DNA of 64,000 bases from Ostrea edulis (lineage: Eukaryota), in assembly GCF_947568905.1 (NCBI RefSeq), contig NC_079164.1, positions 81,716,001 through 81,780,000 on the forward strand, given 5' to 3'. Shown piece after piece: positions 117 to 34,899 of this stretch. The notes beneath the pieces are model-generated. The model was given only the letters and a program-made list of their open reading frames with translations, had not been told where the DNA came from and did no database searches. Both the position numbers and the translations under genes were made by a program. Each line of letters starts with the position of its first letter. Positions within the stretch are counted from its first letter, which is position 1.

Positions 117-1223
117 CTGGAACTCCAAAGCAAAAATCTTTCTTTTCACACTCATTGAAATAATATTGGGTCCATTTCATATCTGGAATGGCAAGTACAG
201 AAATTATGGTGGTTTTTTTTAACAATTCAACTATATTATGATACTTTTAAAACATTCTCTCAAGATATTTTGAATGATTTTATTGTGGGATTAACGAAAT
301 TCATCGCTGTTGTCTTCACTTTTGATTGATTCATTGAATATTCACTTACACTGAAAACTTGTAGGTGACATACACAAAATATTTCCATGTAAGTCTATAT
401 AATTTGACGAGAGTGAATGCTGGAACCATAAATTTGTGCAGGTACACTCCCAGTCGATGTACGTCATGTTAATGGAGGTGAGGGACGTCAAACCATTGAA
501 AAGATCGAAGGAGACCTTGGTGAATTTATTCCGGGACAAGTTGATGGTTTGTACAGCAGTATTTGAAGAAAACATTCCGGTGGTCAAATTGACGAGATTT
601 GCATTGTCCACGGTGATTGATACCACACTAGTGATAGGAGAAAAGAAATTGGTGGCCAGCTCTCCGGCGGTCAGTTGGGCATTCTTTATCGTGAAGCCTC
701 CGATAGGGTTGGGAACGCTGGCAAGTCTCTGAATGGTCAAGCCAGCAAGACTTGATGCATCCGTTGAGGCGATGATCCCCCTGTCGATTTCTAGGTAATC
801 TAACTGCATCCCATTGAATGTGTTGGCTGGGATCCCGTTGTTAAGATTGCAACCCACGAGTCGTAATTCCTGGATATAGGTCATGTCGGAAAAGGAGGTT
901 GTAGCAAGCCCAAGTGTACCCGAAGTGGCGCAGGAAATTTCAAGCGAGGCTTTGTAGTTTGTATCAAACGTGGAGACATCGTAGGCATTGAATCCCGAGA
1001 AGACGCTGGCACTTACCAAGTTACCCGTGAAAAATGTGATTTTCAGTCGTTGTGGGTTTGGACTCGAAAATGATCCAAGCGCGACGGGAAATGTTGCATT
1101 TGTAAAGTCACAAGAATAAACACCTATTGCTTTTGTATATTCCTCGTAGGTACAACCACTAGGGAATGTTGCTCCGTGACACAGAGACTGAAATGCCAGG
1201 ATGACTATTATTTTCAGAATCAT
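117..1223 (-). CDS. LRR transmembrane-family paralog 1, partial; exons 1223-350 and 182-117; TM/tail exon expected beyond the window start
   Basis: ATG at 1223 starts a signal-peptide-like MILKIIVILAFQSLCHGA, followed by PSGC..YSCDF, LxxLxL repeats and WECTCTNLWF (LRRCT). Donor CAGT|GTAAGT at 350/349; acceptor TTCCAG| at 183; 66-nt exon YMKWTQYYFNECEKKDFCFGVPG; donor CCAG|GTAAGA at 117/116. Confidence 0.85.
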
Positions 1224-2492
1224 TTTCGTTTCAGTTTGACGAAGCGCTCTAGCAAACTTTGGTGAGGAACATGCCTTTCCAAAGCGGTTTAAATTTCGCT
1301 GTCTATTTGAAGGAAGAATAAACACCTCCCTTATTACTGTGTATTGTCAGAGGACTAAATCGATCTTTGACATTCTTTAATGAATGTTTCAGATCAGTAT
1401 TTACTTTTGGACTTCATTTATGAATTCGCAATAATAGTTGTTGATACAAAAGATAGCGGACATGACAGAAGACTTACACTGCACGTGACTTTAAGGTGAC
1501 GAGTTGTTCGACTTCGTATGTACAATCGGAAATGGGTTAATACTGTATGTGTAAATGGCCCTGGATATCATATGAAATTAATTCAATTAATGATCATTAA
1601 AGAAAAAAAATCAAATTAACGTTGTCATAAGTAATTCTACGCATATTGAATTGAAACCTACAATTTTATGCCATACTGTAAAATACAAACCTTACCATAT
1701 TTTCATTCGTTGTTAATTTTGTATTTACATTTAAAGAGGCATTAGCTGTGAAAGTAATGACAACCATTTCTTTCTCAAAATTTCTCAATGGTATAGGAAT
1801 ATATCTTAATGACTAAAAAAGTCATTTATTTGTACAAAAACTACGTTTGATAACCACTTCTAGTGTAAAGAAATATATAAGGAAGAATTATTATCTTGCA
1901 AGACAATAATTATTTAATCGTCAAAATCGCACATTTGTGTGCCTGTTTTGAGGTTAAAAAGTGTTTGAAATAATTAAATACTGGTGTTATTACTGAAATA
2001 TATGATAAAGAGCAATTTTCATTGAATTCAATTTTTGGTGACAAAATTACAGATAATGCCCCATTCAGATTTGCAATAGGGCATGGATTTGCATAATTAG
2101 ATTGTATCAACATTTTGATGATTTTAGGTACCTGCCCTTTGATGGCAGTACTACAATGTAGTTACAAATACTGAGGTGGGTTTTTTTTTTAAGTAAACAA
2201 AAATGAATGTTTTCAATGTTCACAGGGATACATTAATCGTAAGATTAAATGCAACCTTTATAAACCCAAAACTAACTTTTTATTGTATCTAATATATTTT
2301 CTTAGCATACCTTGATCTAATTCCTTAAGAAAACATTCAGCACACGGACTATATCTCATTGACAAATAGAGATTATTTATACACCTGAAATGTAAGTATT
2401 AAATTAAATGGTTATTCAAAAGACCACCAAATTATGTGAGTTGGACGTTTAACTATAAGGAATCTATTCACGATAAACTGACTGCCATCAAA

Positions 2493-3961
2493 ATGTCTTC
2501 CTTGATAAGTTTTTTGCTTGGACTTTTGATCGGAATAGTATCGTCTACCACTGCCCCTAGCGGATGTACTTATGATACCTCTACATCTTCAATGGGGCTC
2601 TACATCTGTGATTTTGCTTCAATTACGCTTCCACTTGAGTACAACAATTTCAGCGACCCCGAACCTCAGCGTTTGGTTATTCATGACGTCACTGGGGATA
2701 TTTCAGCATCACAGCTATTCCTTGGTTTCAGTGTCTTCAACTATTCAGCAGTGAATGCAGACTATACAAATTATTTAGAAATTGGGTGTAAATCAGGAGG
2801 CTCCGTACAAATCTCCAACACTACGTTTACAGATCTAAATTTCATCAATGAAGTCAAAATGACTGGCTGCAATTTCACGAGTGGTATACCAAGTAATGCC
2901 TTTTCTACATTCGAAAATCTGGATTCCTTGACAATCGAGGGCGGTATAATATCATCAACACAATCGGATACTTTTTCTGGATTGAACATCACAAAGCTTT
3001 CTAGTGTTCCCAGTCCACAAGGAAAACTTACGATTAAGAACGTCAAAGTAGGGTCCAATTTCTCTTCTGGGTTCTTCGACCCGCTTTCCATGGTTTCCGC
3101 CATTGACATTAGTGGGTGTGGGATCACCACTGTCGATTCTAATACGTTTTTGTACAACAACAAAGTCACTTTACTCAATTTGGCGAACAACAATTTCACA
3201 ACCCTTCCAAGGACATTTCTACAAAACATGACTTCATTGACAGAAGTTGATGTCTCCGGAATTGCCTGGGATTGCTCGTGTGACAATCTCTGGTTTCTGG
3301 ACCACTTTTCTGCGTACTCCATGCGCATCAAAGGTGGCATTCTCTGTAGCGGCGGACAAAGAGCTGCGCAATACTTCGGTGAACAGTGCAGAAGCACCGA
3401 CAATTGCTACAGCATACCAGGTAAGACCCCATCCAGGAGAATAAAGAAAAAGTGACACTATAGAAGAGGGTGTGTCCCCACTAAGTCTTTATTACATGGC
3501 TTAATCAGGCTGATACGATGTCAGAGAAGTTGATATAAAGAATGCAACATCGTCACGAACACACAATCACTGGTAAACAATTGATTTAAAATGGTGCATT
3601 TGGCTCTTTGTCTTTTATTGTATTTCACTTGAATTATATGGTTTTTACTGTTTTATTTTGTTTTTATCTAGGCATCGCCATCGGAATAGACTGTTTTGAG
3701 TGGTACCAAATAATTTCTTACACTTTCACCGCCGTGTCATTTGTCCTGGCCTGGATCGCTTTTGTAGTAGTCGTTGCGTACCGCAGCGCTATGTACAAGA
3801 ACGAGAAGGAAATCGAAATCAGGAAGAGAGAAAAGGCAATACGAGTCTTAGAGGCCCTGAAACGAGGTGGTGGGGGAGGCCAAAAGGCACCTCCTAAGGC
3901 CAATCTCTCATGGGCAATCACAGATCAAGCGGAGAGCACGGAGGTCAAAAAGGCACTTTGA
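2493..3961 (+). CDS. LRR transmembrane-family paralog 2, 405 aa; exons 2493-3420 and 3672-3961 (two exons only)
   Basis: Signal peptide MSSLISFLLGLLIGIVSS, LRRs, WDCSCDNLWF. The stalk (QRAAQYFGEQCRSTDNCYSIPG) is contiguous with exon 1. Donor CCAG|GTAAGA, acceptor TATCTAG|; TM IISYTFTAVSFVLAWIAFVVVVAY; basic tail; spliced length 1218 nt, in frame. Confidence 0.88.
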
Positions 3962-4148
3962 GTCTTTATGTTTTGCAAATGACTTCAAATGTACATATTA
4001 TATTTTTGGAATTGAATAAAGCGTTGTTATACAATAGAATATTTGTAAAATGTAAAGGAATAGTTTCACGTGAGGCTGCACATCAAAATGAATTATCTGA
4101 TCAAAGAAATTAGTACATGTAATCGTAAATGACCTTTAATTAAATTTT

Positions 4149-4449: not shown

Positions 4450-4487
<38 letters not shown>

Positions 4488-4535: not shown

Positions 4536-4544
4536 TTCAATAAT

Positions 4545-5197
4545 CGTTTGGAACTTCCATGGGTATTGATTGTTCTCCTTTGATGGTTGACTTGTTTTTA
4601 TCTTTTTACGAGGTAGAATTTATTCAAAGGCTTCTACATGAGAAGGAAAAATCTCCTGCTGTGGCCTTCAACTCGACATTTAGATGTATCGACGATGTTT
4701 TATTTATTAACAATAATAATTTTCTCTCATATGTCGATTCGATATATCCCAGTGAACTCGAAATAAAAGACACCACAGTCTTCTACATCTGCTTCGTAAT
4801 ATTTGTTCTGCGTGTAGTCACTTTTTGAATTGACAGGCTACTGCAAAAAAAAGTTGTTGTTACAGTAGTTTCAACAGTCTCGATCGAAGTCAGCATTTCG
4901 CAAATTCTATGGTCGTTATAACGATCTAGTTCGTCAATACAACCTGTCATTGGGTCAAATGCTGTCTGACGTGTTTCATACAAATTGTTAGGCCGTTCTT
5001 TAAACGATGATTTTGACTACTGATTACTTCCGTTTACACAGCGGGTGTGACCGGTCGACAGGGGATGCTTACTCCTCCTAGGCCCTGATCCAGCCTCTGG
5101 TATATCCAGGGGTCCGTGATTCCCCAATTCATAATTATATATTCCTCATAGGAGTTATGAGATTGATCACTGTTCGTTATCTTCACTTTTTCATTGA
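4545..5197 (+). mobile_element. Penelope-like retroelement fragment (RT piece plus 3' region), degenerate
   Basis: ORF 4559-4828 MGIDCSPLMVDLFLSFYEVEFIQ..FRCIDDVLFINN resembles the PLE RT GIPMG/RYIDD region. The 3' block GGGTGTGACCGGTCGACAGGGGATGCTTACTCCTCCTAGG..GAGATTGATCACTGTTCGTTATCTTCAC recurs several times in the window. Confidence 0.7.
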
Positions 5198-6070: not shown

Positions 6071-7086
6071 GTTGGAGTATGAATATTTATACAAATAAGA
6101 CTGGAGTATGAATGTGTGATGTGTCTACATCAATAAGACCGGAATATGAATGTGTGGTGTGTCTATATAAATGAGACTGAAGTATGAATGTGTGATGTGT
6201 CTATATAAATAAGACTGGAGTATGAATGTGTGGTGTGTTTATATAAATAAGACTGGAATATGAATATGTGATGTGTTTATATAAATAAGACTGGAGTATG
6301 AATATGTGATGTGTCTATATAAATAAGACTGGAGTATGAATGTGAGATTTGTCTATGAATAAGACTGGAGTATGAATGTGTGATGTGTCTATATAAATAA
6401 GACTGGAGTATGAATGTGTAATGTGTCTATCAATAAGACTGGAGTATGAATATGTGATGTGTTTATATAAATAAGACTGGAGTATGAATATGTGATGTGT
6501 CTATATAAATACAACTGGAGTATGAATGTGAGATTTGTCTATGAATAAGACTGGAGTATGAATGTGTGATGTGTCTATATAAATAAGACTGGAGTATGAA
6601 TGTGTAATGTGTCTATCAATAAGACTGGAGTATGAATATGTGATGTGTCTATATGAATAAGACTGGAGTATGAATGTGTAATGTGTCTATCAATAAGACT
6701 GGAGTATGAATGTGTAATGTGTCTATCAATAAGACTGGAGTATGAATGTGTGATGTGTCTATATAAATAAGACTGGAGTATGAATGTGTAATGTGTCTAT
6801 CAATAAGACTGGAGTATGAATATGTGATGTGTCTATATGAATAAGACTGGAGTATGAATGTGTAATGTGTCTATCAATAAGACTGGAGTATGAATGTGTG
6901 ATGTGTCTATATAAATAAGACTGGAGTATGAATGTGTAATGTGTCTATCAATAAGACTGGAGTATGAATATGTGATGTGTCTATATGAATAAGACTGGAG
7001 TATGAATGTGTGGTGTGTATATAAATAAGACTGGGGTATGAATGTGTGATATGTCTATAAATAAGACTGGAGTATGAATATGTGAT
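6071..7086. repeat. Minisatellite, 36-38 bp unit, about 27 copies
   Basis: Tandem AATAAGACTGGAGTATGAATGTGTGATGTGTCTATATA with 36-bp variants. Confidence 0.95.
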
Positions 7087-7216
7087 GCGGAATATTAATT
7101 TAGTGTTCAAATACTGTATATCACATGTATTGTTTTGATTTATACCCTAATACAATTAAAATCAAATGCATATTTTCAATTACATGATTTCTAAAGTTGT
7201 TTTTCACCCTCCCCCT

Positions 7217-7791: not shown

Positions 7792-9948
7792 ATGAGGGGT
7801 TTGATGTGCTTTATGTTGTGTCTGACATTTTATTCATGGCGGATCAAAGCTGCACAGCCGACAGGATGTAGTTACAGCACAGAAACTGGGTCACGTGGTC
7901 TGTATACCTGTGACTTCGCGGTTATGTCCCTTCCCGTTACCTACAGTGCCTTCACCAACCCAATACCCCAGCGTATTAAGATCAGGAATATCAACGGTAA
8001 CTTTCCAGTGTCATCTCCGACGAAGTCTTTTAACGGATTCGGAAGCTATTCAACAGCCAGCCATGACTCAGACTTCACCTCCTATGTGCAGCTTGAATGC
8101 TCAACCGGAAATCCTGGGGGACAGGTCATAATTTCATCAGGAACGTTTTGGCAGATGACTTACCTTGAAGAACTGCATATTAAAAACTGTAGGTTAACAA
8201 ATGGTCTGCCTGAATATGTATTTGCTGACATCAAAAGTTTGCACATATTAACAATTGAGGGAGGTTCTATCGCAGCAACGTCCGGAAACAGTATGGCCGA
8301 CTTCAACATCACCGTATCTTCGGCGTTAATCAATTCCAGAGGCGTTTTAAACTTCACAAATGTGGCCTTAACTGGAGGAGCGATAACCAGTGGCTTTTTC
8401 TACCCCTTGACCACTGTGGACACCATCATCCTGGACAATAACGGTCTCACCACCGTAGACACCTCCATGTTCTCTCAGAACACTCGGCTTCGACAACTCT
8501 TTATCAGAAACAACCCTATCACCTCTATCCCAAACAATATGTTTTCGGGTTTGGACGCCTTGACGTTCGTGGAACTGAGTGGAATGAGTCTAACATGTTC
8601 CTGTGAAAATGTCTGGTTCATCAAGCACTTCAACGACAACAACATCACTCTTGGAGACGGAGCTCTGTGTTCAATGAGTACAAATGGTAATCTTTAGAAC
8701 CTTGAACAGAGTAGATGAGGATATTGACTGTTCATTATTTTCTAGAATACAAGTACACTTTTCATCTTTCTTCATTGAATAAGAAATTATATATGAGCTT
8801 CATCGTAGACTCAAGAGGGTTAGCTAGCTGCGGAACTGTAATTCTCTGGGGAATTGGGTTAGCTGCGGAACTGTAATTCTCTAGGGAATTGGGTTAGCTG
8901 TGGAACTAGTTCTCTGGGGAACTGAGTGAGCTGTGGAACTGTAGTTCTCTGGGGGAAATGTAATATATACCAGAGAGCTACAGACCCTTCCGCTACAAAA
9001 ACCTTCCGATTTACAGCGCAACTTTTTCTGCGTACGATTGAGGTGGGATATCGCTGTATCCTTCAATCGTAGCCTCATTTGTTTTGATATCAAAACATAT
9101 TTCCCCCACTACAGTTTAGTCAAGTCAAACCATCAAACATTCATTAAATCCCAGGGGTTAACATAGTTACAAGCAAAATTCATTGAAGCTTCGAGTTTTC
9201 GGTCAGCATATCTAAATTCAGCGATAAAAGACTTAGATCGTGGGCAGAAAAGGGTCCGTTGCAAATGTAAGGTTTTGATAAAGCTTGTATATGTAGCTCA
9301 GAGAGTTGCAACTACAACAAAGATAGATCGAAGATTTTGATTATCATAACTGCAATGAAGCTCATCAATTGTTTTTTTTGATTTTTTTTAAAGAAAGAAA
9401 TCCAAATATCAGGTAATCTAAAGATTTTTTCCCTTTTCCATTCTAGTGAAAAATGCCGAGAAATATTATTATGAAAACTGTGTGACATATGATATCTGCG
9501 ATGGAATACCAGGTAAATGAGTCGAATGATCAAGAATACTCATTACAGATGTACATCAACATTACACGTCATAATTACAAAATGTAAAACTTTTAATGTA
9601 TATGTAAAGGGGATCACAACACCCAAACGTCTTCCGTGCTACTACAATGTATCATTATTACAGTATGTGCATTTTGTTCTGTTACTTCTAGGTCTCATCG
9701 TTGGAGACACCTGCTACCACTGGTTTAGGATTATCTTTGTCCTCTTACTTATCCTTGCTATAATCCTCGTTATCTTGGTATTCGTTCTCCTTTGTCATAC
9801 CCGGAAGAAACTGATGTCGCAGCACGATAAACTCAGAGCCAAACAGACAGAAAAGTGGTCTAAAATCCAACAGGTCCTTAACTCTCAGACTGTCAGCAAA
9901 CAGAAACCGCCTGCCGCCACTTTACCACCGAAGGCTGCCAATTGGTGA
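7792..9948 (+). CDS. LRR transmembrane-family paralog 3, 405 aa; exons 7792-8686, 9447-9512, 9692-9948
   Basis: Signal peptide, PTGC..YTCDF, LRRs, LTCSCENVWF. Donors G|GTAATC and CCAG|GTAAAT; acceptors TTCTAG|; 66-nt exon VKNAEKYYYENCVTYDICDGIPG; TM IIFVLLLILAIILVILVFVLLC; tail ends KQKPP..ANW*; 1218 nt in frame. Confidence 0.9.
8826..8955. repeat. About 35-bp tandem repeat (about 3.5 copies) in intron 1 of paralog 3
   Basis: AGCTGCGGAACTGTAATTCTCTGGGGAATTGGGTT repeated with decay. Confidence 0.8.
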
Positions 9949-10149: not shown

Positions 10150-10958
10150 GTAAAGGGGCATTCTGTTAGTATTGCCATGGGCATGAACTGTGTTCCTGTA
10201 TTAGCTGACATGTTTGTTTTTTCTTATGAAACAGAATTTAGTCCAAACATCTAAATGAGAAGAAAAAATCTCTTGCTGTTGCCTTCAATTTGACACTTAG
10301 ATACATCCACGACGTTTTATCTACAACACTCACCTTCATTCATTCGTCGATTCGGTATATCCCATTAAACTCGAAATAAAAGATACCACAGAGTCTTCCA
10401 TATCTGCTTCATATTTGGATATTTTGAACATGGGCGTTAACGGCAAACTCTACTTTATGACAATCGAGATGAGTTCAGCTTCCCATTCGTCAGCTTTCTA
10501 TATTCAAGTCGCTACATCACCTGCATATGGTTTTAATGTATCTCAACTGATTCGATACGCAAGAGCATGTTTTGCGTACGATCAATTTTCAATCGCGACA
10601 GACTGCTGACGAATAAGTTGATGTTAAATGGGTTCAACTGTCTCGTTTAAAGTCAAAATTTCGCGAATTCTTTGGTCATTATAATGATCTAATTTGCAAA
10701 TACAACTTTCATTAGGTCGAATGATGTCTGGTGTGTTTCATACCGATTGTTAGCTGATTTTGAAAACATGACTCCGTTTACCTGATCAAGATATAGAACT
10801 CACGGTGAGTGTGACCGGTCAACATGGCGTGGTTAATCCTCATACGTACCTGATCCCACCTCTGATGTTTCCTGGGGTCCTTGTTTGCCTTACCCTCAAT
10901 TTTGTATTCTTTATGGGAATTATGAGATTGATTACTGTTCGTTCTTCTCACTTTTTCA
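10150..10958 (+). mobile_element. Penelope-like retroelement fragment, degenerate
   Basis: ATTGCCATGGGCATGAACTGTGTTCCT (IxMGxNC), AGATACATCCACGACGTTTTATCT (RYI.DVLS) and the same 3' block as 4545-5197. Confidence 0.7.
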
Positions 10959-15767: not shown

Positions 15768-17329
15768 ATGGCTTTTGGAAATTGCGCTCTGTTTTTCTTT
15801 TTGTCTCTGCTGAGTTTTGTGAATGGCGCTAACTTTCCTAGCGGGTGTTCATACTACGATGAAATGGATTCCACTCATCTATATAAATGCACATTTGGTA
15901 CAGTTTCTTTACCTCTGACATACAGTACTTTCAGTGATCCTCTACCACAGTGGATTCAAATCGCAAAAATCAACGGTAACATCAATGCGGGTTCCTTCAC
16001 CGGATTCGATTCTTATGACACGACCAAACTGAGCCACGACAAAAACCCTACTCTTCAGCTTTTCTGTACGACCGGGGGATCCTTAAATTTACAGGCTACA
16101 TCGTTCAACACTCTTGGATACATACAAGAAGTCGAAATTTCAAACTGTAACGTCAATTTACCTGCCAACGTCTTTTCACCGTTTGGGACATTAAACAAGC
16201 TGACGATCAGGGGAGGTACCCTGACCTTAAATTCTGCCACATTTGAGGGACTGACGATCGAACCAATAGATCAATACACCGACCCAGCAGGGGCACTAAT
16301 AATAAAAGATCTTACCATTAGTGGAGGGTTCCCGACCGATGTTTTGAAGCCCCTAAACAAAACCAAGACCATCCGTATAGAAAACGTTGGACTGACATCA
16401 ATCAATGACACTGTGTTTTCAGCCAACTCCGGACTTCACACGCTCTCTTTGAAGGACAATCTGATTCTAGACACCATCCCCACTACCTTCTTTACTGGAC
16501 TTGATGGCTTGGCGAATTTCGATCAGACATCATTCCAATGGACCTGTACGTGTGATAACGTCTGGTGGTGGCCTAAATCCATCGTGAAAAATATCACGAT
16601 TCAAGGACCGGCTATCTGCAGTGGCCCTGCCGACGTTGCGGGTAAGAGTCTTTTTTCAATGAAATAGTCCTTTCTTTCATTTCTTTTCTGTTATTTCTTT
16701 GTCTTTGTAACTGCTATGTTTTGCAGCAAAATTGTTGTGTGCTTGTTTCAGGAATGGTTGTAGGAAAGTACTATGACACGAACTGCGTAACAACCAGTGT
16801 ATGTGGCGATAATATAGGTAAGATTTCTTGATAGGAACTCGAAATGAATCATGTTTCATTGTTATTAGTTAAGAACCAGAATTTGTACAATTCAAATGGT
16901 AAATAAGTTAGAATAAAACCCAGGAGTTTCACTTGGTCTTTTTCAGATACCAAGGGTATAACAGTCAATCAAATTTATACTCTATCAATTATCAATACCA
17001 ACAAAAATTGAATTGACAATCGTCTTTAACAATACTCATTACATTTTGCGCAATTTTTCCATTTTTAACATATGTGAGTTGTTTTTGCAGGTGTTGCTAT
17101 CAGTTCCACATGTCTTCCGATGGGATATTTGGTCGGGTTTGGTCTTATATTTGTAATGCTCATCATATGTATCGTAGCACTTGCCTGCATCTGTCACTTG
17201 AGAAAGAATGCTCTGGCTGGTCCAGTCAAAAAGACACGAAGAGGGCCTCCTCCGCCCGGTGCCAAAAAAGGTAAAGGCGGCAGTGGCGGCGGTGGCGAAA
17301 AGAAACGAAGAGGAAGCGGATGGGTGTAA
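15768..17329 (+). CDS. LRR transmembrane-family paralog 4, 392 aa; exons 15768-16641, 16752-16817, 17091-17329
   Basis: Signal peptide MAFGNCALFFFLSLLSFVNG, PSGC..YKC, LRRs, WTCTCDNVWW. Donors G|GTAAGA (twice); acceptors TTTCAG| and TTGCAG|; 66-nt exon; TM then a Gly/Lys/Pro-rich tail ending GWV*; 1179 nt in frame. Confidence 0.9.
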
Positions 17330-19179: not shown

Positions 19180-19560
19180 TCATGAAAGGTGAAGATAACG
19201 AACAGTGATCAATCTCATAACTCCTATAAGCAATACAAAATAGAGAGTTGGCCAAACACGGACCCCTGGATATACCAGAGGTGGGATCGTGTGCTTAGGG
19301 GGAGTAAGCGTCCCCTGTCGACCGGTCACACCCGCCGCGAGCCCAAAATCAGTGTGCCAAGAACGGCCTAACAATCTGCATGAAACACGTCAGACAGCAT
19401 TTGATCCAATGATAGGTTGTATTGGCAACCTAGATCGTTAAAACGACTATAAAATTTGCGAAATGCTGATTTTAAACGAGACTGTTGGAACCCCTGCACC
19501 ATCAACTTGTATCGCCTAATGATTTTGAAATACTGATCTACATATATTACTAATGAAGTC
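19180..19560 (-). mobile_element. Penelope-like 3' fragment
   Basis: Reverse complement of the shared 3' block (ATGAAAGGTGAAGATAACGAACAGTGATCAATCTC..ACCGGTCACACCCGCCG); translates to ..YKLMVQGFQQSRLKSAFRKFY. Confidence 0.7.
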
Positions 19561-21007: not shown

Positions 21008-22553
21008 ATGGCGGCTGGTAAGTGGTTCTGCCTTTTTCTTGTGTCCTCAATATTTGATTCTACTTTTGGGAATCCCGCCGGCTGCTCGGAAAAGGCGGGG
21101 AACTATGACAGCGTCCGACCCGTGAGATGTACGAAGTCTGGAACTCTTTCGAACACATTTAGCACCTTCTCCTGGCAAAGGCTTGAGGTAACAGAGTACC
21201 AAACTGGGGTGTCAGCGGGTGATTTCTCTGGATTTTCATCGGCATCAACAACCAGTTTCGACTCTTCATATCCCCATTCCCTCACCATAGTCTGTAAGCC
21301 TGGTATTACGTCCTTCACCGTGGCTGCCAATGCGTTCTCCCAGTTTCCTAACGTCCAAGTATTAGAGTTTCTGAATTGTCCCATCACGTCGATTCCCGCC
21401 AACGCTTTCCCGGGGCACTACTTGGATCACTTAATTTTCACTGGTGGTAAAATAGGCTCAATTGACGCTAATGCATTCAGTGGTCTGAATATTAGCAAGC
21501 TCTCCATTCCAGGAGCTGTTGGTGGCATAACCATAAACAGCGAGCTAACCTCAGGTCTTCCAGAAAAAGTCTTCGATTCGCTGCAGTCCATGGAATATCT
21601 AGCTATAGATGAAGCGAAAGTCAGCACCATCACTGTGGGCATGGTTGGAAACCTCACTAATCTCCGATATTTGAATTTACGAAATAACCTCATCACTAAC
21701 ATCACAGACGGTATTTTCACCAATATGAAGAGTTTATCTTACCTTGACTTTGAGGGTAATAAGTTTACATGCACCTGTACCGATCTATGGTTCCTTAAAT
21801 ACACAGCTGAAAACCATATCCATTTGCTTGGAGGACCACTGTGTGAAACCCCAGCTTCTCACAACAGTAAGTTGTTTTTTAATTCACTTTACAATGAAGA
21901 TTTTAAGGAGTACGTTGATTGAAGAACTAGGATTTATCACATCTTTGTATGTTTCAGCCAAGAGGGTGACCGTGTACGACGACGAAGTCTGCGCTGTGGA
22001 CGATGTATGTGGTGGTACAGCTGGTACGTAAATTTTCAAATTGGTGTCCAATAAATTCAAAGATAGATCGCTCCATATTGATAACTTTTTAAAAAAGGTC
22101 AAATATTTTATTAAAAGTTATGTCCCCTTCTTCTTGAATCTCCTCCATCTCTAGCAAAGAAGCTGTGGACGTTTTATTGCAAGCAATATTAATCCCAATT
22201 TCATACTCTAATCCGTTAATTAGATAGATAGATTGAACCTAACTTGAACTGTACGAATGGAAAGAAAAATCAATGGTACGAAAATGTGTTATTCTGAGTA
22301 TTTTATAGGACTGGCCATGGGCGGCAGTTGTATGCCGCTGTACCAGTTAGCGAGTTACCTGCTGCTTCTCATCATCCTGATCCTCTCGTGTGTGGCACTG
22401 GGCTGTATCTGTAAGACCCGTAAAGAGCTCACAAGGGTACAGAGGAGGATGAAGAACAAACGGGCTAGTTCTTGGAATAGGGTACAGGAAGCCATGAAAC
22501 AGAGGAGCGGTGCGAAACAAAAACCACCAGTCGGAAAAAATGGATGGGTGTGA
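21008..22553 (+). CDS. LRR transmembrane-family paralog 5, 389 aa; exons 21008-21866, 21958-22023, 22309-22553
   Basis: Signal peptide, NPAGC..VRC, canonical LRRs (LTNLRYLNLRNNLIT), FTCTCTDLWF. Donors A|GTAAGT and G|GTACGT; 66-nt exon TKRVTVYDDEVCAVDDVCGGTAG; TM; tail SSWNRVQEAM..KQKPP..GWV*; 1170 nt in frame. Confidence 0.9.
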
Positions 22554-23867
22554 TCGTTGATCACGTCAATTTCAATTCAATATATTATTTTGAGACATTT
22601 CACGAATTGATTCTTATCGAATACCAATTGTTTCTCCTTGTTACTGCCTGTAAAGCATTGACATGATGTGAATTTCTTTGTTGATTGTCGGGCGACCACT
22701 AGCTTGGTCGTGCGTTTCCATGCTTTGCTTCATTTTAATAAATTGTTACAACTACATGTGTATGCCTTTGTCTACAGGGCAAAGCCAGGGGATTCTTGTT
22801 AACTTTGCTTAACATTGTCTTTACGGTATTCAATAAACTTCCCCAAGCTTGGATCGAGCTATCATTTTAGGTTATTCCCTGGAGGGTCGATGGTTTCCAT
22901 GCCATAGGACCATCACACGAACATTTTCTGACTGTATCTCTCGTTTTATTGTATGGAGATTTCGTGATTTTCTTGCGATCCTTTTATTCACTGCAGAGGT
23001 TTTGTCAATACATGGAAAAAGATCATTAATATATAACCGCTGTGATAATTTACTGCAAATAAAATGTATTCTCCTGCGAATAGATATGGTAATTTCGAAT
23101 CCGCCACCAATTACCTTGATTTAGGGCAGATGGATTTTTTTCCTTTCTTTGATTGCATGCAATACATAATTCAAATAATTGTCATGATACAATAGAAATA
23201 TTCTACGACCTGAAATCATGTTCTAAATGATTCACAGATAATTTTTTGTCGATAAGTATGCGATAGACTAGTAGTGTTTTTGACATTTCGTTTGACGACG
23301 AATTGTCCGTGACTTGTTACGTTTTGGTAGATATGGAGCCTTTACTAGTGGAACTTCCGATGAAGCTCAGTCATGGTGGCGCTCAATTTATCATTAATTG
23401 TTTTGAAGTTCTACAATATAGTTTTATTTTGTGGTATGACCGATTACATGAAGACAAAGATTAAACGTCTACCATTACAATCATGAAAACCTAGTATTTT
23501 CCCCCAGGAACTACATAGTTTATAATATTTGCCACCGATACATACCAGCCGACGCCATATCCTCACCACAGAATTAAAATTAGGCGCTCCCCCACATTTT
23601 TTTTTAAAAAGTTAAGTAAATCTCTGCGTATCAAAAAGAGGGTACACATTTGCAATATTTTATGAACTGGCGATAGAAGCACTGGGATTTCATCATGACA
23701 CCCTTTCAGTAGACTTGCACCCAGTTTCTAAAGACTTTATCAAGGGAGTTTTATTCGAAGTGAATGGCAAACACCTAACTCTTATACAGTGCGTGTGACT
23801 ACCTCACATCACTACATTGTCTGAATATTTACAATGGACCAGATTCGTGTATGGATATATGGATCAG

Positions 23868-24077
23868 GGGTGCGTTTTACAAAAGAACTTACGACCAACT
23901 TCACATACTGAAATTTTCTCGATTATTGTAAGATCATTCACTTCAATGTAAAATAGTGAAAAAAATAATGTTGAAAATTATCTCAGAATTGTTTTAATTC
24001 ATTCATTTACACTGATAACTGTGTAATACAATTTAAGTCTTGCGATTTTATCGTAAGTTGTTTCGTAAAACGGGCCC
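23868..24077. mobile_element. MITE, PIF/Harbinger-like (CAG TSD)
   Basis: TIR GGGYSCGTTTTACRAAASAACTTACGA; CAG at 23865-67 and 24078-80. Confidence 0.75.
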
Positions 24078-24153
24078 CAGGCATCTAGCATCGTTTTCAA
24101 CAGCTAGAGGAAGGACAGTCGGAGACAGTTGCTGAAGCTGTGCTAAGAGTAAC

Positions 24154-24532
24154 CAGGGGCAGATCCAGGAATTGAAGTTAGGGGCGCAACTTCATGATGC
24201 AGGGGGTCGGGGTGTGTGTGGGGGGGGGGGTCTTAAGCCACCAGTGGGTGTAGTGGGGGCCCAAAGAGTTTATAGGGCTTGAAATATGTCTTTTATGTTG
24301 TCGTTTTTACTGTTTTCTGTCATTTTTAATAAGGTGAAATTAATTAAATGACACAAATTAAGGGGTTTTTGGGGAAAAAACGTACGTTCTCCCAGTAAAA
24401 GTAACAATAAATCAAAATATCCTGCCATTTATTTCTTTGATAGTGGGAAAAAATTGCTTCTTTTATCGTTTATTCAAGAGACTATTTGGAAATTTTAAGT
24501 GGGGTGCGCCACCTCCCTTAAATCCGCCGCTG
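24154..24532. mobile_element. MITE of the same family as 17625-18028, 5-bp TSD GTAAC
   Basis: Starts CAGGGGCAGATCC, ends AAATCCGCCGCTG; GTAAC at 24149-53 and 24533-37. Confidence 0.75.
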
Positions 24533-25038: not shown

Positions 25039-26484
25039 ATGGCGGACACCCTGTTAATTGCTGTTTGTATATCGTTAGTTCCCTGGGTAAGTGCAAACCC
25101 TGCGGGCTGTGTGGCCAAGCCCGGGAATCTGGATTCCGTCATACCGACTCAGTGTACGTCTGGGTCATTCTCAACACCTCTGTCCCGCTCCTCTTTTACA
25201 ACCTTGTCTTGGCAGAGACTGGAATTTGTCGAGTATCAGAGTTCTTTCACATCCAGTCATTTCACCGGATTTTCAGGAGCTTCAACATCCACGTTTAGTC
25301 CAGATTTTCCTATTACGGTTACCATAAAATGCAAATCTGGAATTTCAACTTTTTCCTTTGCCGCCAATGCGTTTTCGCAGTTTACAAGCGCACAGGAAGT
25401 GACGATCATAAATTGTCCCATAACATCGTTTCCAGCCTCAGTATTCAACGGACTGACTTTAAGTAAGCTAACCATTCAGGGTGGGAAAATAACAACAATA
25501 GACGCGGGAACATTCACGGGACTGACCATAACAAAAATGAATATCACATCAGAGGAAAGCGGACTCATCATCAGGGATTGTCCAATCACAAATACGCTTC
25601 CAGTAGGTCTTTTTGAATCTCTGACGTCAGTGGAATTTCTCATCCTGGAGGGAACTAATCTGGACTACATTGCAACTACTACATTCACCAACTTGACAAG
25701 TCTCCACTACCTGAGCTTGGCCAATAACAGACTGACAAATATATCATGGGGGATCTTCGATGAACTACGAGCGCTTACTGAAGTCAACATGGAGGGTAAC
25801 AATTGGGCCTGTACTTGCGATGATCTCTGGTTTCTGGATTACAGCCTTCAGCAAGACCTCAGGCTTAGCGGTGGGCCTTTATGTGACACACCTACAGAAT
25901 ATAATTGTAAGAGGGTTTTTTTAAATCTTGAGAAAATATTACAATTAGATTTTATGAATATGTCTATGTCGTGTTTTATGTTTTTTCCCTCCTCATTCAT
26001 CCTTGAATTGTAGATAAGCGTGCAACAAAATATTGGGATGAAGTCTGTCCTAAGATGGATGCTTGCGAATACAGTCTAGGTAAGAAGGTCAAACGGGAGG
26101 GACACTTATAACGAACGATTTGATACAGCTTTATACTTTAATCTTACCACATAAACAGAGTAAAGGTACAATTAAAATCATATAGGACACACTATATCGT
26201 GATTATCCTTTTCCCTTCTAGGTTATGCTATGGGTCCAGGTACTTGTGTTGTAATGGCGGATTTGGTTAGTTATGGTATTGTGGTGATTACAATCATCAT
26301 TGCTACCATCGCCCTAATCATCATTTGTAAGGTACGTCGCGATCTGAGGGGTGTACAAGACAGATTGAAAAACAAGAGGGCCACTTCGTGGGGCCGTGTG
26401 CAGGAGATGATGAAGAAGAAAGAGGCAAATGGAGGGGCGTCACAGAAACCGCCATTTCCTCCCAAAGCAGGCTGGGAAAAATGA
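25039..26484 (+). CDS. LRR transmembrane-family paralog 6, 398 aa; exons 25039-25906, 26014-26079, 26222-26484
   Basis: Signal peptide, NPAGC..TQC, LRRs (LTSLHYLSLANNRLT), WACTCDDLWF. Donors T|GTAAGA and G|GTAAGA; 66-nt exon YKRATKYWDEVCPKMDACEYSLG; TM; tail TSWGRVQEMM..QKPPFPPKAGWEK*; 1197 nt in frame. Confidence 0.9.
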
Positions 26485-28164: not shown

Positions 28165-28391
28165 GTCACATTCTTGGCACACTGATTTTTAACTGCGGAT
28201 TACTCTGTTTACTTGATCAATATATAGGGCTCACGACGGGTGTGACCGGTCGATAGGGAATGCTTACTCCTCCTAGAGGCACCTGATCCCACGTCTGGTA
28301 TATCCAGAAGTCCGTGTTTGCCCAACTCTCTATTTTGTATTGCTTATAGGAGTTATGAGATTGATCACTGTTCGTTATCTCCACCTTTCAT
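28165..28391 (+). mobile_element. Penelope-like 3' fragment
   Basis: Shared 3' block ending GTTATCTCCACCTTTCAT. Confidence 0.7.
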
Positions 28392-28804
28392 GTATAGATC
28401 AAAGGACATTTCAACCTTACGTTGATGTCAATTGAATGCCATGTTCTGATGGTATAAATGTGACGTCATATTCCGATATATCATAAATTTTAAAGAGAAA
28501 AAAAAAACCCAAGATGCCCAAGGGCCACATCGCTCGCCTGAGTAACCTTGGCTCTACCGTTGTTCAGCATGTCAGTCAAGTTTTGTTCCCATGAAAATTT
28601 TTGACACCATATTGTGGCCCCAACCTAGCCCCAAAGGATAACGACATAACTGAAAATGATTTCACAAAACACGAATGTGCCTCAACACAAATATGACCTT
28701 CCTGTTCTGGTTTACACAAAGATGACAAGGTCATAATGTGAAATGAATTATCTTGCCATAAGAAATCTATATACAAAATATGAAAGCTCCATCTTAAATA
28801 GTTC

Positions 28805-29187
28805 TGGTGCATCAAAATTGGTACCGTATAAGTTTTATATTATGACCCCTGGGTCGAGGCCTCTGCTGGTGGACTGTTAGTCCCCGAGGGTCTCTACAGC
28901 CCAGTAACTAAGTACTTCGTTACTAGCTTGAAAATACGGATGTATATTTAATTGCTGTTATAAAATTTAGAAATTCATTTCAAAATTAAGGATTATCTCC
29001 CTCACGCATAGCTCTTATCCTTCGACGAATTTGACTCCACGTTTTTGGCACACTGTTTTTCCCTATAATAGCTCTAAAACTTCATTGTTATTTCGGATTT
29101 CAAACATTTCGGTTGAGCATCACTGAAGAGACATAATTTGTCGAATGCGAATCTAGTGCATCAAAATTAGTACCGTATAAGTTTTAC
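28805..29187 (+). mobile_element. Penelope-type terminal repeat / retrozyme-like insertion: 349-nt monomer plus 34-nt terminal redundancy, TSD ATAGTTC
   Basis: TGGTGCATCAAAATTGGTACCGTATAAGTTTT at 28805 is repeated as TAGTGCATCAAAATTAGTACCGTATAAGTTTT at 29154; ATAGTTC at 28798-804 and 29188-194. Confidence 0.75.
29117..29159 (+). ncRNA. Minimal type-I hammerhead ribozyme motif, degenerate copy
   Basis: GCATCA-CTGAAGA-GACA(TAATT)TGTC-GAA-TGCGAA-TC|TAGTGC: CUGANGA core, 4-bp stem II, stem I GCATCA/T(A,G)GTGC. One A of GAAA is missing and the stem III palindrome has a mismatch. Confidence 0.7.
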
Positions 29188-30191
29188 ATAGTTCAGGAGA
29201 TATTGATTAGGTCAGATTTTTTTAAAAGTATGTCAAGGTCACAAGATCAAACATAATTGTATCACAAGGTCATGTCATAAAACATCTATATACAAAATAT
29301 AAAAGTCCTATCTTCAATAGTTCCAAATATTTTGATTGATTATATTTTCTAATTAGTAGGTTAAAGTATAAGGACAAAGTCAAATATCACGCAAGAAATA
29401 AAAGGTCTTCCCATGAGAAATCTCTATACACAATATGAAATATCTACATTAAATAGTTCAGGAGATATTGAAAAGATCAGTTATTTTTTAAAAGTAGGCC
29501 AACTCCAAGGTCAAGGTCACAAGTTCAAACTTCACGGAATAAAAAGATCTAGCCACAAGAAATTTATATACAAAATATGAAAACCCTGCCTTAGATAGTT
29601 CAGGAGCTATTGAATAGGTCAGAGTTTTTAAAAAGTAGGTCAAACTCCAAGGGCAAGGTCACAAGTTCTAACTTCAAGGAATATCAAGGTCTTGTCATAA
29701 TGAATCTATATACAAAATGTGAAAGCTCTACTTAAATAGTTCCAAATATATTAAATAGGTTAAGTTTTCCTAAAAGTAGGTCAAACTTAGAGTTCAAGGT
29801 CACAAAGTCAAAATACATAATGAAAAATGAAATGTTTTGCCATATGAAGTTTACATACAAAATATGAAAGATCTACCTTGAATACTTCAGAAAATATTGA
29901 ATAGGTTATCTTTTTTAAAGTAGGCCAAACTTCCAGATCAAGGTTACAAGAACACACAACATTGCAATACATGGAAGGTCCTTCTGTAAAGAATGTATAT
30001 ACAAGATATACACGCCATAGAATATATAGTACAAGAGATATTTCTAAAGATTTTTTCCTATCTAGCAGCATATGTAAAACTTTGATTCCCTATTGTGGCC
30101 CTACCCTACCCTCCGGGGGTATGATCTGAACAAACTTGAATCTACTTAAAACCAGAAAGCTTTCCGGTAAATCTCCACTCTTATGACTCAG

Positions 30192-30974: not shown

Positions 30975-31016
<42 letters not shown>

Positions 31017-31040: not shown

Positions 31041-31299
31041 ATGACTCAGTGGTTCTTGAGAGGAAAATGTTTAAAGATTTTCCCTATATTATATTTGCAT
31101 GCAAAACTTTGATCCCCTATTGTGAACCCACCCTACCACTGGGGTAATGATTTTAACAAAGTTGAATCTGCCCTGTGTCAGGAAGCTTTCGTGTTAATTT
31201 CAGCTTTTCTGGCCCAGTAGTTCTTGAGAATATTTTTAAATGACTCCACTCGATTTTTGCATTTTCGTGATTATTCCCCCTTTAAATGAGACATGGCCG

Positions 31300-31334
<35 letters not shown>

Positions 31335-32074
31335 AGTGAATTGTACTAAGTTTGGTTGAAATTTGCTCATTGGTTTTGGAGCAGATGATTTTCCTATATA
31401 TATCAGCTGTAAAACTTTGACCCCCCATTGTAGCCCCACCCTCCCAAGGGGGTCATGATCTGAACAAACTTGAATCTATTTTATATCAGGAAGCTTTCGG
31501 GTAAATCTCCACTATTATGGTTCAGTGGTTCTTGAGAGGAATATTTTTTTTTTAAAATTCCCTATATATTTGCATGCAAAACTCCCTATTGTAGCCTACA
31601 CCCTATCCCGGGGGTCATGATTTTAACAAACTTAAATCTGCACTATGTCAGTAAGCTTTCATGTGAATTTAAGCTTTTCTGGCCCAGTGGTTCTTCAGAA
31701 GATTTTTAAATAACCTCACCCTATATTTGCATTTTTGTGATTATCTCCCCCTTTGAAAAGGGAATGGTAATTCATTGAACAAAATTGAATCCCCTTCACC
31801 CAAGAATGATTTGTACGAAGTTTGGTCGAAATTGGCCTAGTGCTTCTGGAGAAGACGTCGAAAATGTGAAAAGTTCACAAGCAGATGGACAGATCACGGA
31901 CAACAGGTGATTAGAAAAGTTCACCTGAGCTTTAAATTCAAGTGAGCTAAAACTGAACGTTTAATCTTGGATATAAATAAAAGTCTTAATATCTGTAGCA
32001 CAGATATTTTTTGTGTTGATAAATTTAAATAATCTGTACAAAATATATCAGAAAATATTAGGAAAATGTTTAAT

Positions 32075-32176
32075 CAATCTGATTAAAACCACATCCTGAG
32101 ATCCGCTCACTTAGATCGCTACACTAGTGTAGCGATCTAAGTGAGCGGATCTCATGATCTGGTTTTAATCAGATTG
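32075..32176. mobile_element. 102-bp spacerless palindromic MITE, CAA..TTG ends, 9-bp TSD ATGTTTAAT
   Basis: Arms pair over 51 bp with 2 mismatches around CTACACT|AGTGTAG; TSD at 32066-74 and 32177-85. Confidence 0.8.
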
Positions 32177-33218
32177 ATGTTTAATTTGTATGGTTGATTC
32201 TTTTTTTATGATGTAACTACTCTTTGTAAATGATAGAAAGTTCTAAAATAACACAGCAACATAAAAAGAACAAGAATAATGTAACTGTCTTTGGAATACA
32301 AGTAAACTTGTATAAATAGCATCATTTTGTTTTGTCTAGCCTTTGTCAGTTGTTTTGAGTTCCACACCGTGAGGTTACCCACGGTCCATAATCCATTATT
32401 AAAAGATATTCCCCGATTACGGATTAACCCTGTTTAAAGTTCGCAACATCGCAAAGAAACCTTAAGTCGCAATGTAGGTCAACTCATTAGGTCGGCGTTA
32501 GCTTATGTTTTCTTACTTTCATGGAGACTAATTCCGACGGAATGTCAAAGACCTCACACCCTAAATTTCCCCCATGAGGACGTAATTTACATATTTCGAT
32601 ACGAATAACTTGGGGCACGTGCAACAACACTCTATTGTTTGTTTAATAATAATTTTTTATGAACAAATATTTTTTTTCCCGTTTTTTTAACTTTGTCGTT
32701 TCCTCTTTTACGTAACTTTGGAAAAATATTTTAAAGACACTTTTCTCCATTTTTGCAGGGAGGCTGAATTAATTAAACAATCAAGCTAAATGTACACATT
32801 TTTATTCTAATTTAATGAGTATGTACAGTGTGCCATTAAGAAATTCCATGCATGTAATAATGGCTTCAGATTTTCGCGAATTTATACCTAGAATTGACAG
32901 TGTTTATGTGCCAACAATTGTCTTAATCATCGAAGAAAAGAGGTTAAATGTCTTTTTATTTTTCAATCGTCTTAGGCTTTATCCATAAAATTCGTGTTCA
33001 ATATTTAAGAACTTAAATCAATAAGAATTATAAACTTTTCAGTGTATTCTACAGTCGTGTTATTTAAGGATTTCACGGATCACTGGACATACGAGCATTT
33101 CATATTAATATTGAAATACCTCCTCTAAAATCCAAGACCATTTTCCTTCCACAGGGTGTTGAGGATAAAAATATCTCCGATGTAATTTTTGAGAAGTAGT
33201 GACATTAAAGCGGACAAC

Positions 33219-34899
33219 ATGTCTCTTCCTTTTGCGATCGTAGTCTTGGCTGTGTGTTCGACAGTGTACGGAAATCCCCAAGGGTGTACCTACGATTCTT
33301 CACAGCTCCTGCACACGTGCAATGCCAGAGCTTGGTCCCTTCCACTGGCCTTTGGTACATTCACACCTCAGCCTCAAAGGATCCTATTGAGGGAAGTGGA
33401 TGGAGAGCTTCCGAATGGCACTCCAAGCGGGCCTACGTTCTCTGGATTCTCCTCCATAAATACGGCAAGTTTTGATTCTAATTACGCCCCAGAACTCATC
33501 ATTAGATGCACTTCCAACGGACAACTTATCATCACCCAAGCTGCTTTTGCTGACATGGGATGGGTAGAGGAACTGACCATTGAAGACTGTGATATTCTCT
33601 CACTTCCTGTTCAAGTATTCAAAAACTTTGGGGACTTGAACCGATTTTCCATCATTGGTGGGTCTGTCGATGCCATGGTTGGAGACAGTTTCACAGGAAT
33701 GAATGTTGATAAAATGAGTACGGTCCCTGACCCTCGAGGAGAGTTTGTGGTCAAGAACAGCCGCCTGGTGTCCGGAGGATTTGCTTTTGGCGCTCTTTTC
33801 TCGCAGGCTAATGCTACGCGCATCATCATTGAAAACGCCAATCTAAAGTCGGTCCAGACTGATATGTTTTACGCTCTTCAGAAGATGACTTACTTGTCTT
33901 TGAGTAACAACCCATTTACATACCTTCCAACGGACCTATTCAAAGGAATCAACTCACTGACAACTGTGGAACTTTATGGCATATCCTGGGCATGTACTTG
34001 TACCAACATTTGGCCCCCAGAGTGGTTAGCAAGCAACAACATCACGATGAACGGAGATGCCGTCTGTGGGTCCCCAACTGCCTACGAAAGTAAGATTTCT
34101 GTGTTCATTCTTCGACAAATTCAACAAACATAGACCATAAACTGTCATATTTACATATTTGGTATATACCTATTTTCAGATGTAAAAATGTCCTATTATG
34201 AGAAGGAACAATGTCCGCAAGATGACGCCTGTGCGAAAGCTGGACAAACAGGTATCTTTAACATAGTTTACAACAAATACTGTGGAATCATTTTAATTCG
34301 TGGGGGCCAATGTTCGTGGTTAAGCAAACTTTTGCTGGTTCGTGGGGACGTAATTTCGTGGGTAAGCGATACGATGTCACTTGGAAAGATAACTTTACTT
34401 GGTTTAAAAAAAATGTTCGAGGACACGTAAATTCGTGGGTAAGAGTGACCCAAGAAACATCAATCCCCCAAGAACAATGATGATACCACAGTATTACAGC
34501 GATATGCACATATTGAGTCTTAATCTTCGAATATAATTCCTATTATGATTGATATAAAATTCACGATCGCATATAAGAATTTTTAAGAGAAGACACTGCT
34601 TGGTATTTAGTCGTTTCACTATTTTTCCTGTGTCCTGAAACCACCGTTGGCTGTTATTTACAGGATTTGTTGTTGGGAGCATTTGTATGACAATTTTGGA
34701 CATCGTTAACTACGCCCTGCTGCTAACCACGTTCATACTATCTCTAGTGGCCTTGGGACTGGTCATCCACACCAAGCGACAAGTAGGTAGCGCCAAGGAC
34801 TCCAAACAGAAAGGCAAACCGGCCGCCAAGGGATCGGCGCTCAGGCGTTCAAGTGCCAGCTGGAATAAAGTCGAAGATGCTCAAAGCGTTCAGTCTTAA
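33219..34899 (+). CDS. LRR transmembrane-family paralog 7, 392 aa; exons 33219-34089, 34180-34251, 34664-34899
   Basis: Signal peptide MSLPFAIVVLAVCSTVYG, NPQGC..HTC, LRRs, WACTCTNIW. Donors A|GTAAGA and G|GTATCT; 72-nt exon NVKMSYYEKEQCPQDDACAKAGQTG; TM; tail ASWNKVEDA; 1179 nt in frame. Confidence 0.9.
34280..34491. mobile_element. Tc1/mariner-type MITE (TA TSD) in intron 2 of paralog 7
   Basis: CTGTGGAATCATT..GATACCACAG flanked by TA; internal TTCGTGG repeats; sibling at 37217-37424. Confidence 0.8.

What the first reader, a model, noticed from the sequence alone, without database searches (positions are those of the whole stretch)
117..34899. Seven-gene tandem cluster of TIR-less LRR type-I membrane receptors
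Seen: seven paralogs share signal peptide - Cys cap - degenerate then canonical LRRs - LRRCT - Cys stalk - TM - short tail, with the same phase-1 intron positions. All six complete genes splice into intact frames despite dense TE insertion between them. They are strongly diverged (no obvious DNA similarity by eye), and paralogs 5 and 6 form a subgroup (NPAGC..K.GN.DSV.P..C, GGPLC.TP). Known: LRR ectodomains mediate ligand recognition in TLRs, VLRs, LRIM/APL1 and adhesion receptors, and bivalves expand immune receptor families. Inference: an old, maintained, diversified receptor array for pattern recognition, allorecognition or adhesion that signals without TIR. I do not recognise it as a named family.
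Basis: partly seen in the sequence, partly recalled or inferred. Interest (0 to 1): 0.8.

Follow-up and report, generated by a model that had tools for sequence, protein, structure and literature searches.

The report
Seven-gene oyster LRR membrane-receptor cluster
A flat-oyster chromosome carries seven old, intact, side-by-side genes for small leucine-rich-repeat surface proteins of an unnamed mollusc family; they evolve slowly, which fits fixed binding partners better than fast-changing immune sensing.

Summary
Window 117-34899 of Ostrea edulis chromosome OX387704.1 holds seven paralogs, 27-35% identical (g5/g6 46%). Six are complete; g1 is cut by the window edge.

Each encodes a 389-405 aa type-I membrane protein:
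- signal peptide and two-Cys N-cap;
- about 8 LRRs, the first four irregular;
- a four-Cys LRRCT and two juxtamembrane Cys;
- a transmembrane helix and a 44-62 aa tail.

All splice sites are GT-AG and all introns are phase 1; g2 lacks intron 1. The NCBI model for g5, misnamed "toll-like receptor 13", equals my model. An mRNA contig from another oyster skips exactly the predicted g2 intron.

There is no TIR or any other domain. Saccostrea cucullata has the same seven genes in the same order. Relatives occur in scallops (also in tandem), mussels, a clam and abalone (same intron phases), under mutually inconsistent automatic names.

Ortholog dN/dS is about 0.06-0.08, with saturated dS. Concave-face positions show no excess change between orthologs (p=0.12). 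They are the most diverged class between paralogs (20% against 32% identity, p=0.002). A tail motif is shared by oysters and scallops.

"Old, maintained, diversified, TIR-less, unnamed" holds. An immune or allorecognition role has no support. No O. edulis RNA evidence was obtainable.

The parts
117..1223 (-). g1 (partial in window): exon 1 at 1223..350, exon 2 at 182..117; the TM/tail exon lies left of the window
   Evidence: ORF and alignment. Donor GT after 350, acceptor AG before 182, 66-nt exon 2 ending CCAG|GT. The Saccostrea ortholog has all three exons, including the TM exon.
2493..3961 (+). g2, 405 aa: exons 2493-3420 and 3672-3961; intron 1 absent
   Evidence: The mRNA contig L004 of another oyster aligns to 2486-3421 and 3670-3961, skipping the predicted intron. 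The Saccostrea ortholog has the same two-exon structure.
7792..9948 (+). g3, 405 aa: exons 7792-8686, 9447-9512, 9692-9948
   Evidence: The Saccostrea protein P0002 (81% identical) has the same junction residues.
15768..17329 (+). g4, 392 aa: exons 15768-16641, 16752-16817, 17091-17329
   Evidence: An NCBI gene call of 392 aa spans the same 1562 bp.
21008..22553 (+). g5, 389 aa: exons 21008-21866, 21958-22023, 22309-22553
   Evidence: It is identical to the NCBI protein P0011, 'toll-like receptor 13 [Ostrea edulis]'. AlphaFold2 model: mean pLDDT 78.5, above 90 over most of residues 90-250.
25039..26484 (+). g6, 398 aa: exons 25039-25906, 26014-26079, 26222-26484
   Evidence: NCBI gene call of 398 aa. 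Sister to g5.
33219..34899 (+). g7, 392 aa: exons 33219-34089, 34180-34251 (72 nt), 34664-34899
   Evidence: Its clade includes mussel and scallop members (97/97 support).

Best explanation
This is a tandem array of seven anciently duplicated genes of an unnamed mollusc family of small type-I membrane LRR glycoproteins. Shown: each protein has a signal peptide, a capped LRR solenoid of the Nogo-receptor/GPIb-alpha/VLR size class, ten conserved ectodomain Cys, one TM helix and a short basic tail with no known domain. Each gene has a one-to-one ortholog in another oyster genus and is under strong purifying selection. Paralogs differ most on the concave beta-sheet face, while each ortholog pair keeps its own face. 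The tail is the most conserved part between orthologs and carries a motif, basic stretch - (S/T)SW-x-(K/R)-V-Q-(E/D)-A/M - Gly-rich - QKPP - GW(V/I) at the C-terminus, shared by several oyster paralogs and scallops, and in part by g3 and mussels. Inferred: each paralog binds its own evolutionarily stable ligand on the concave face, probably a host protein or another fixed structure. It passes the signal on without enzymatic activity of its own, either through the conserved tail helix docking a cytosolic partner or through lateral association with a co-receptor. This is the mode of adhesion or co-receptor LRR membrane proteins, not of arms-race immune sensors.
For: Architecture and splicing. 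Independent gene models and an mRNA contig. Only LRR Pfam families, no TIR. Fold: Z 18-20 to VLR-A, Nogo receptor, LINGO-1 and GPIb-alpha over model residues about 18-309, from a model with pLDDT above 90 over most of residues 90-250. Synteny of all seven genes in Saccostrea. dN/dS 0.059-0.081. By class, tail 0.039, concave face 0.076, other ectodomain 0.071. Paralog identity 19.8% on the concave face against 32.4% elsewhere (Mann-Whitney p=0.002). Tail motif in oysters, scallops and mussels. Family members in scallops, mussels, Mactra and Haliotis. Same phase-1 introns in Haliotis. Tandem pair in a scallop.
Against: No ligand, tissue or expression data exist for any of the seven genes. No RNA run of this species was available. 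dS is saturated (1.3-1.8), so site-specific positive selection cannot be excluded by a two-species comparison. Concave positions were assigned from sequence motifs and DSSP strands, not from coordinates. Many true pattern-recognition receptors are also under purifying selection. The stalk and juxtamembrane part of the model has low confidence (pLDDT below 50 at 281-317).
Confidence: 0.6

Rival explanations
1. The proteins are innate-immune pattern-recognition receptors of the 'LRR-only TLR-like' kind. The LRR ectodomain binds microbial patterns and signals by pairing in the membrane with a TIR-bearing partner, as described for Hydra LRR-only plus TIR-only proteins, or through another adaptor.
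For: The architecture is LRR ectodomain + TM without TIR. LRR-only TLR-like proteins are a recognised class, with a Hydra precedent (PMC8609888). Scallop LRR-only proteins are reported to bind LPS, PGN, glucan and poly I:C (PMC5877582). TLR3, TLR13 and Toll ectodomains are among the best sequence matches of the C-terminal LRRs plus LRRCT.
Against: The TLR matches cover only the generic last repeats and the LRRCT. There is strict one-to-one orthology and no copy-number change between oyster genera. dN/dS is about 0.07 with no excess on the concave face. No partner is encoded in the window. No expression or induction data are available.
Confidence: 0.25
2. The proteins are subunits of a disulfide-linked hetero-oligomeric surface complex or auxiliary subunits of another membrane protein, in the way of GPIb-IX-V or LRRC26-type channel gamma subunits. 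The clustered paralogs would work together rather than as separate receptors.
For: Two conserved Cys lie just outside the membrane, beyond the four of the LRRCT. GPIb-alpha is among the best structural matches (Z about 18.5-18.9). The seven genes have stayed together in the same order in two genera. That juxtamembrane Cys link the GPIb subunits is my own background knowledge.
Against: The ten conserved ectodomain Cys are an even number and can all pair within one chain. Structural scores are tied with many unrelated capped LRR proteins. Abalone has a single copy within 10 kb on either side. Nothing tests co-expression.
Confidence: 0.1
3. The array is decaying: some copies are unexpressed pseudogenes, and the intact frames are chance or recent.
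For: No O. edulis RNA evidence could be obtained. Repeats fill part of the spacers.
Against: All frames and all splice sites are intact in two genera, although dS is above 1. dN/dS is far below 1 for all five gene pairs tested. Spliced mRNA contigs exist for orthologs in other oysters. NCBI models agree.
Confidence: 0.03

Closest known systems
LRR-only TLR-like proteins (for example the Hydra LRR membrane proteins that pair with TIR-only proteins; PMC8609888)
   Same: LRR ectodomain, single TM, no TIR domain; an operational class that these proteins fit.
   Different: No shown sequence relation. No partner, immune role or induction is known here. The evolutionary mode is conservative.
Capped small LRR ectodomains: Nogo receptor, GPIb-alpha, hagfish VLR-A, LINGO-1 N-terminal part
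   Same: The whole ectodomain (N-cap, about 8-9 repeats, four-Cys LRRCT) superposes with Z 18-20 at 14-20% identity.
   Different: These are tied with dozens of other LRR proteins. NgR is GPI-anchored and VLRs are somatically assembled (background knowledge). The first four repeats here are irregular and carry a family-specific Cys pair (LRR2 to the Asn-position Cys of LRR3).
Synaptic and adhesion LRR membrane proteins (LRRTM2, NGL/LRRC4, SALM, FLRT, Slitrk)
   Same: Best PDB sequence matches are LRRTM (5a5c), LRRC15 and LRRC4B. They are type-I LRR proteins with short tails and conserved endogenous protein ligands.
   Different: Matches cover only the canonical C-terminal repeats and the LRRCT. 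There are no Ig or FN3 domains. The tail motif is unrelated. No family-level relative was found outside molluscs.
Scallop LRR-only proteins CfLRRop-1 to -6 (PMC5877582)
   Same: Bivalve proteins with LRRs as the only domain, proposed as pattern-recognition receptors.
   Different: They are described with 1-4 LRR domains. Their sequences were not at hand, so the relationship is untested.

Membership tests
Toll-like receptors | Cytoplasmic TIR domain | tested here: not met
   Pfam scans of all seven exon-1 products, of full-length P0011, P0002, P0174, P0007, P0155 and P0189, and of the isolated tails found only LRR families. The tails are 44-62 aa, too short for a TIR domain.
Toll-like receptors | LRR ectodomain plus a single TM helix | tested here: met
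   The RefSeq name 'toll-like receptor 13' for g5 rests on this part only.
LRR-only TLR-like proteins (operational class) | LRR domains present, TIR absent | tested here: met
   class definition in PMC8609888.
LRR-only TLR-like proteins (operational class) | Works with a TIR-bearing partner in immune signalling | not testable with these tools
   No interaction or expression data. No TIR gene lies in the window.
TPBG/5T4 or another single named vertebrate LRR family (one-to-one orthology) | The closest relatives outside the family belong consistently to one named family | tested here: not met
   Automatic names of members scatter over at least nine unrelated families. Outside molluscs only 17-21% of the query aligns, for example to LRRC4C. 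TPBG is not among the top 60 PDB sequence matches or the top 50 structure matches.
Unnamed mollusc LRR-TM family (defined here) | N-cap P-x-G-C...C; (P)QRL strand; Cys in LRR2 paired with an Asn-position Cys in LRR3; CxC...C...C LRRCT; two juxtamembrane Cys; TM | tested here: met
   Invariant columns in all seven paralogs, also present in scallop, mussel and abalone members.
Unnamed mollusc LRR-TM family (defined here) | Three exons with two phase-1 introns flanking a 66-72-nt exon | tested here: met
   Six of the seven O. edulis genes and their Saccostrea orthologs, and Haliotis rubra. g2 has lost intron 1.
Unnamed mollusc LRR-TM family (defined here) | Conserved tail motif (SSWxKVQ ... QKPP ... 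GW[VI]) | tested here: inconclusive
   Clear in g5, g6 and scallop P0066/P0070, partial in g3; degenerate in g2, g4 and g7; absent in the g7-clade mussel and scallop members and in Haliotis.

The most novel reading that the evidence does not exclude
The conserved cytoplasmic helix and C-terminal motif (SSWxKVQxA ... QKPP ... GW[V/I]-COOH) is a new docking module. It would define a mollusc-specific, TIR-independent LRR receptor pathway in which seven paralogs with distinct, individually conserved concave faces read seven different ligands into one shared intracellular route.
Probability: 0.15. Interest if true: 0.6.

Novelty: new member of a known kind. Interest (0 to 1): 0.33.

Why it matters
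Bivalve genome annotations scatter this family under misleading names such as TLR13, PLA2 inhibitor, GPV, Nogo-receptor-like, FLRT and slit. This can inflate counts of 'immune receptors' and hide a coherent family that has kept its gene structure across bivalves and abalone. Recognising it gives mollusc biologists a defined set of seven one-to-one orthologous surface proteins with a conserved tail motif to test for ligands and partners. It also corrects the expectation that every clustered bivalve LRR array is an arms-race immune expansion. It is not a new kind of system: TIR-less LRR membrane proteins are common in animals.

Tried and rejected
- RNA evidence: the look-up of sequencing runs listed six holders, none on record as RNA. 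The four laid were low-coverage contig runs that also cover the g5-g6 spacer and show no splice joints, so O. edulis expression is untested.
- The word-index protein search is swamped by generic LRR words and missed scallop and abalone members. The exhaustive profile search found them, but its top 150 is half filled by giant multi-LRR proteins, so weaker relatives outside molluscs may be unseen.
- Pfam on spacer ORF fragments that looked retroelement-like by eye gave nothing, so I do not call them transposons on that basis.
- Rfam found nothing in the window at gathering scores, and nothing at E<=1 in 28500-30100.
- A literature search for a Magallana gigas member (K1Q5U9) found no paper. Searches for TIR-less LRR membrane proteins in bivalves found only general reviews.
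- Foldseek TM-scores were low because the TM helix was included; the VIA second look gave usable Z-scores.
- Exon mapping of scallop P0173 failed in my script.
- Rejected: TLR membership (no TIR), pseudogene array (dN/dS), and a bivalve-specific origin (Haliotis member with the same introns).
Full report
**What is there.** The ORF list shows seven long ORFs of about 300 aa, one on the minus strand and six on the plus strand.
- They align over their whole length at 29-35% identity to g1, with 22 invariant columns including six Cys. The full pairwise matrix is 27-35%, with g5/g6 at 46%.
- Reading downstream of each ORF shows a 66-72-nt exon and a last exon with a hydrophobic helix.
- Every junction is GT-AG and phase 1, and the six complete genes give open frames of 389-405 aa.
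- g1 has exon 1 at 1223..350 and exon 2 at 182..117 on the minus strand; its last exon lies left of the window.
- g2 has no first intron.
- tblastn with the spliced proteins finds exactly these seven loci in the 64 kb.
- No DNA-level similarity between paralog exons is detectable.

**Independent support for the models.** The window is Ostrea edulis chromosome OX387704.1 (GCA_947568905.1).
- The NCBI protein 'toll-like receptor 13 [Ostrea edulis]' (P0011, 389 aa) is identical to my g5 model.
- NCBI gene calls of 392, 389 and 398 aa match g4, g5 and g6.
- A 1328-bp Logan contig (SRR24489168) from another oyster carries an uninterrupted 405-aa ORF. It aligns to window 2486-3421 and 3670-3961, skipping exactly the predicted g2 intron. 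It is therefore a spliced mRNA of the g2 ortholog. Several similar short contigs exist.
- For O. edulis itself no RNA run was available. The runs holding the DNA are genomic contigs without splice joints.

**Protein anatomy.**
- Pfam finds only LRR families, and only over the last two or three repeats. There is no TIR or other domain in full-length proteins or tails.
- AlphaFold2 on g5 gives a continuous solenoid, with pLDDT above 90 over most of residues 90-250 and strands from residue 58 on. It also gives a helix from the TM into the tail, and a low-confidence region at 281-317.
- The ectodomain superposes on capped LRR modules of the same size: VLR-A Z 20.2, Nogo receptor 19.2, LINGO-1 19.2, GPIb-alpha 18.9, with many others tied. 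Alignments reach residue about 300-309.
- So the first 'stalk' Cys is the fourth LRRCT Cys, and two further Cys lie next to the membrane.
- Ten ectodomain Cys are conserved. There are 3-8 N-glycosylation sequons, and tails are 44-62 aa.

**Age and family.** Saccostrea cucullata contig JAVVLV010012759.1 carries orthologs of all seven genes in the same order and orientation.
- A non-LRR gene lies left of g1 there.
- The g1 ortholog there has all three exons, although it is annotated as 292 aa.
- Exon structures are the same, including the missing intron 1 of g2.

An exhaustive profile search finds full-length, single-stretch matches of 300-560 aa.
- These come from scallops (Pecten, Ylistrum, Mizuhopecten, Argopecten), mussels, the clam Mactra, and the abalones Haliotis rubra and H. 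asinina.
- Source names are mutually inconsistent, and many members are 'uncharacterized'.
- In a tree, each O. edulis gene groups with its Saccostrea ortholog (g1 has no Saccostrea row) and a further oyster sequence at 100% support.
- g5 and g6 are sisters, and the g7 clade includes mussels and scallops (97/97). The deep backbone is unresolved.
- A scallop has two members in tandem.
- The abalone gene is single within 10 kb on either side, but has the same two phase-1 introns around a 72-nt exon.
- Outside molluscs only generic LRR matches were seen, covering 17-21% of the query.

**Mode of evolution.** dN/dS between Ostrea and Saccostrea orthologs is 0.059-0.081 for g2-g6, on saturated dS of 1.3-1.8. 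Pooled by class:

| Class | dN/dS |
|---|---|
| Concave-face x positions | 0.076 |
| Other ectodomain | 0.071 |
| Tail | 0.039 (lowest class after the L4/L6 core, 0.030) |
| Signal peptide | 0.26 |

- The amino-acid difference rate on the concave face is 21.7%, against 16.1% elsewhere. This is not significant (Fisher p=0.12).
- Between paralogs the concave positions are the most diverged ectodomain class: 19.8% identity, against 32.4% for other ectodomain columns and 46% for core positions (Mann-Whitney p=0.002).
- So binding faces diverged early and have since been kept.
- The tail carries a motif shared by g5, g6 and scallops, and in part by g3 and mussels: basic stretch, (S/T)SW-x-K/R-V-Q, Gly-rich, QKPP, then GW(V/I) at the C-terminus.
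- Four genomic runs from three studies all hold the g5-g6 stretch. They show only three coding differences, one of them non-synonymous.

**Interpretation.** What is shown is a conserved seven-gene array of TIR-less LRR type-I membrane proteins of an unnamed mollusc family.
- I infer that each paralog binds its own stable ligand on the concave face. It would signal through the conserved tail or a co-receptor, like adhesion or co-receptor LRR proteins (confidence 0.6).
- The immune 'LRR-only TLR-like' reading stays possible (0.25). Precedents are Hydra (PMC8609888) and scallop LRRop proteins (PMC5877582). It gains nothing from the evolutionary pattern.
- A hetero-oligomer or auxiliary-subunit reading is a minor rival (0.1).
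- Pseudogenes are excluded.

**Spacers.**
- Intra-window repeats cover 0-49% of the spacers, 8-49% for all but the g1-g2 spacer.
- One dispersed family has five copies.
- There are satellites at 6088-7087 and 29232-29950.
- One element at 23760-24495 sits at about 100-1000 times the flanking depth.
- Pfam gave no transposon domain in the ORF fragments.

**Limits.**
- The big search's visible list is truncated.
- Concave positions were assigned from motifs.
- There is no expression, ligand or population data.

**Verdict.** This is a new (uncharacterised, mis-annotated) member of a known kind, of moderate interest.

Noticed in passing
window 36000-40400: A G+C-rich block (49-50% against about 35-40% around it) holds many short broken ORFs on the minus strand that look retroelement-like by eye. 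Pfam found no family in three of them. No ORF of 130 aa or more lies anywhere in 34900-64000.
   Followed up: partly
window 39291-39879 and 41730-41996: Short tandem repeats read as repetitive peptides on both strands.
   Followed up: no
window 6088-7087: A 38/74-bp satellite of about 27 copies, 87-90% alike, lies in the g2-g3 spacer.
   Followed up: partly
window 28500-30100: A 142-bp tandem array of about 5 copies lies at 29232-29950. Rfam found no hammerhead or other family here at E<=1, nor anywhere in the window at gathering scores.
   Followed up: partly
window 23760-24495: This element reaches about 100-1000 times the flanking depth in genomic contig runs, with many variant joints. It is a high-copy repeat in the g5-g6 spacer.
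   Followed up: no
window 4548-5193, 10158-10958, 19185-19508, 28199-28392, 49818-50367: Copies of one dispersed repeat family, 67-90% alike, lie in four spacers and to the right of the array.
   Followed up: partly
L005 7438-9000 (Saccostrea cucullata): The g1 ortholog is annotated as a 292-aa product, but all three exons, including an intact TM/tail exon at 7737-7438, are present. The annotation looks truncated.
   Followed up: partly
P0126 (Mactra antiquata, 562 aa): This protein, named 'flrt1', contains one full unit with a TM followed by a second partial LRR-LRRCT-stalk unit. It is probably two tandem paralogs fused by annotation.
   Followed up: no
window 21251: A non-synonymous A>G difference (Thr82Ala in g5) is seen in three of the four genomic runs. 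Two other coding differences, at 21745 and 25047, are synonymous.
   Followed up: partly
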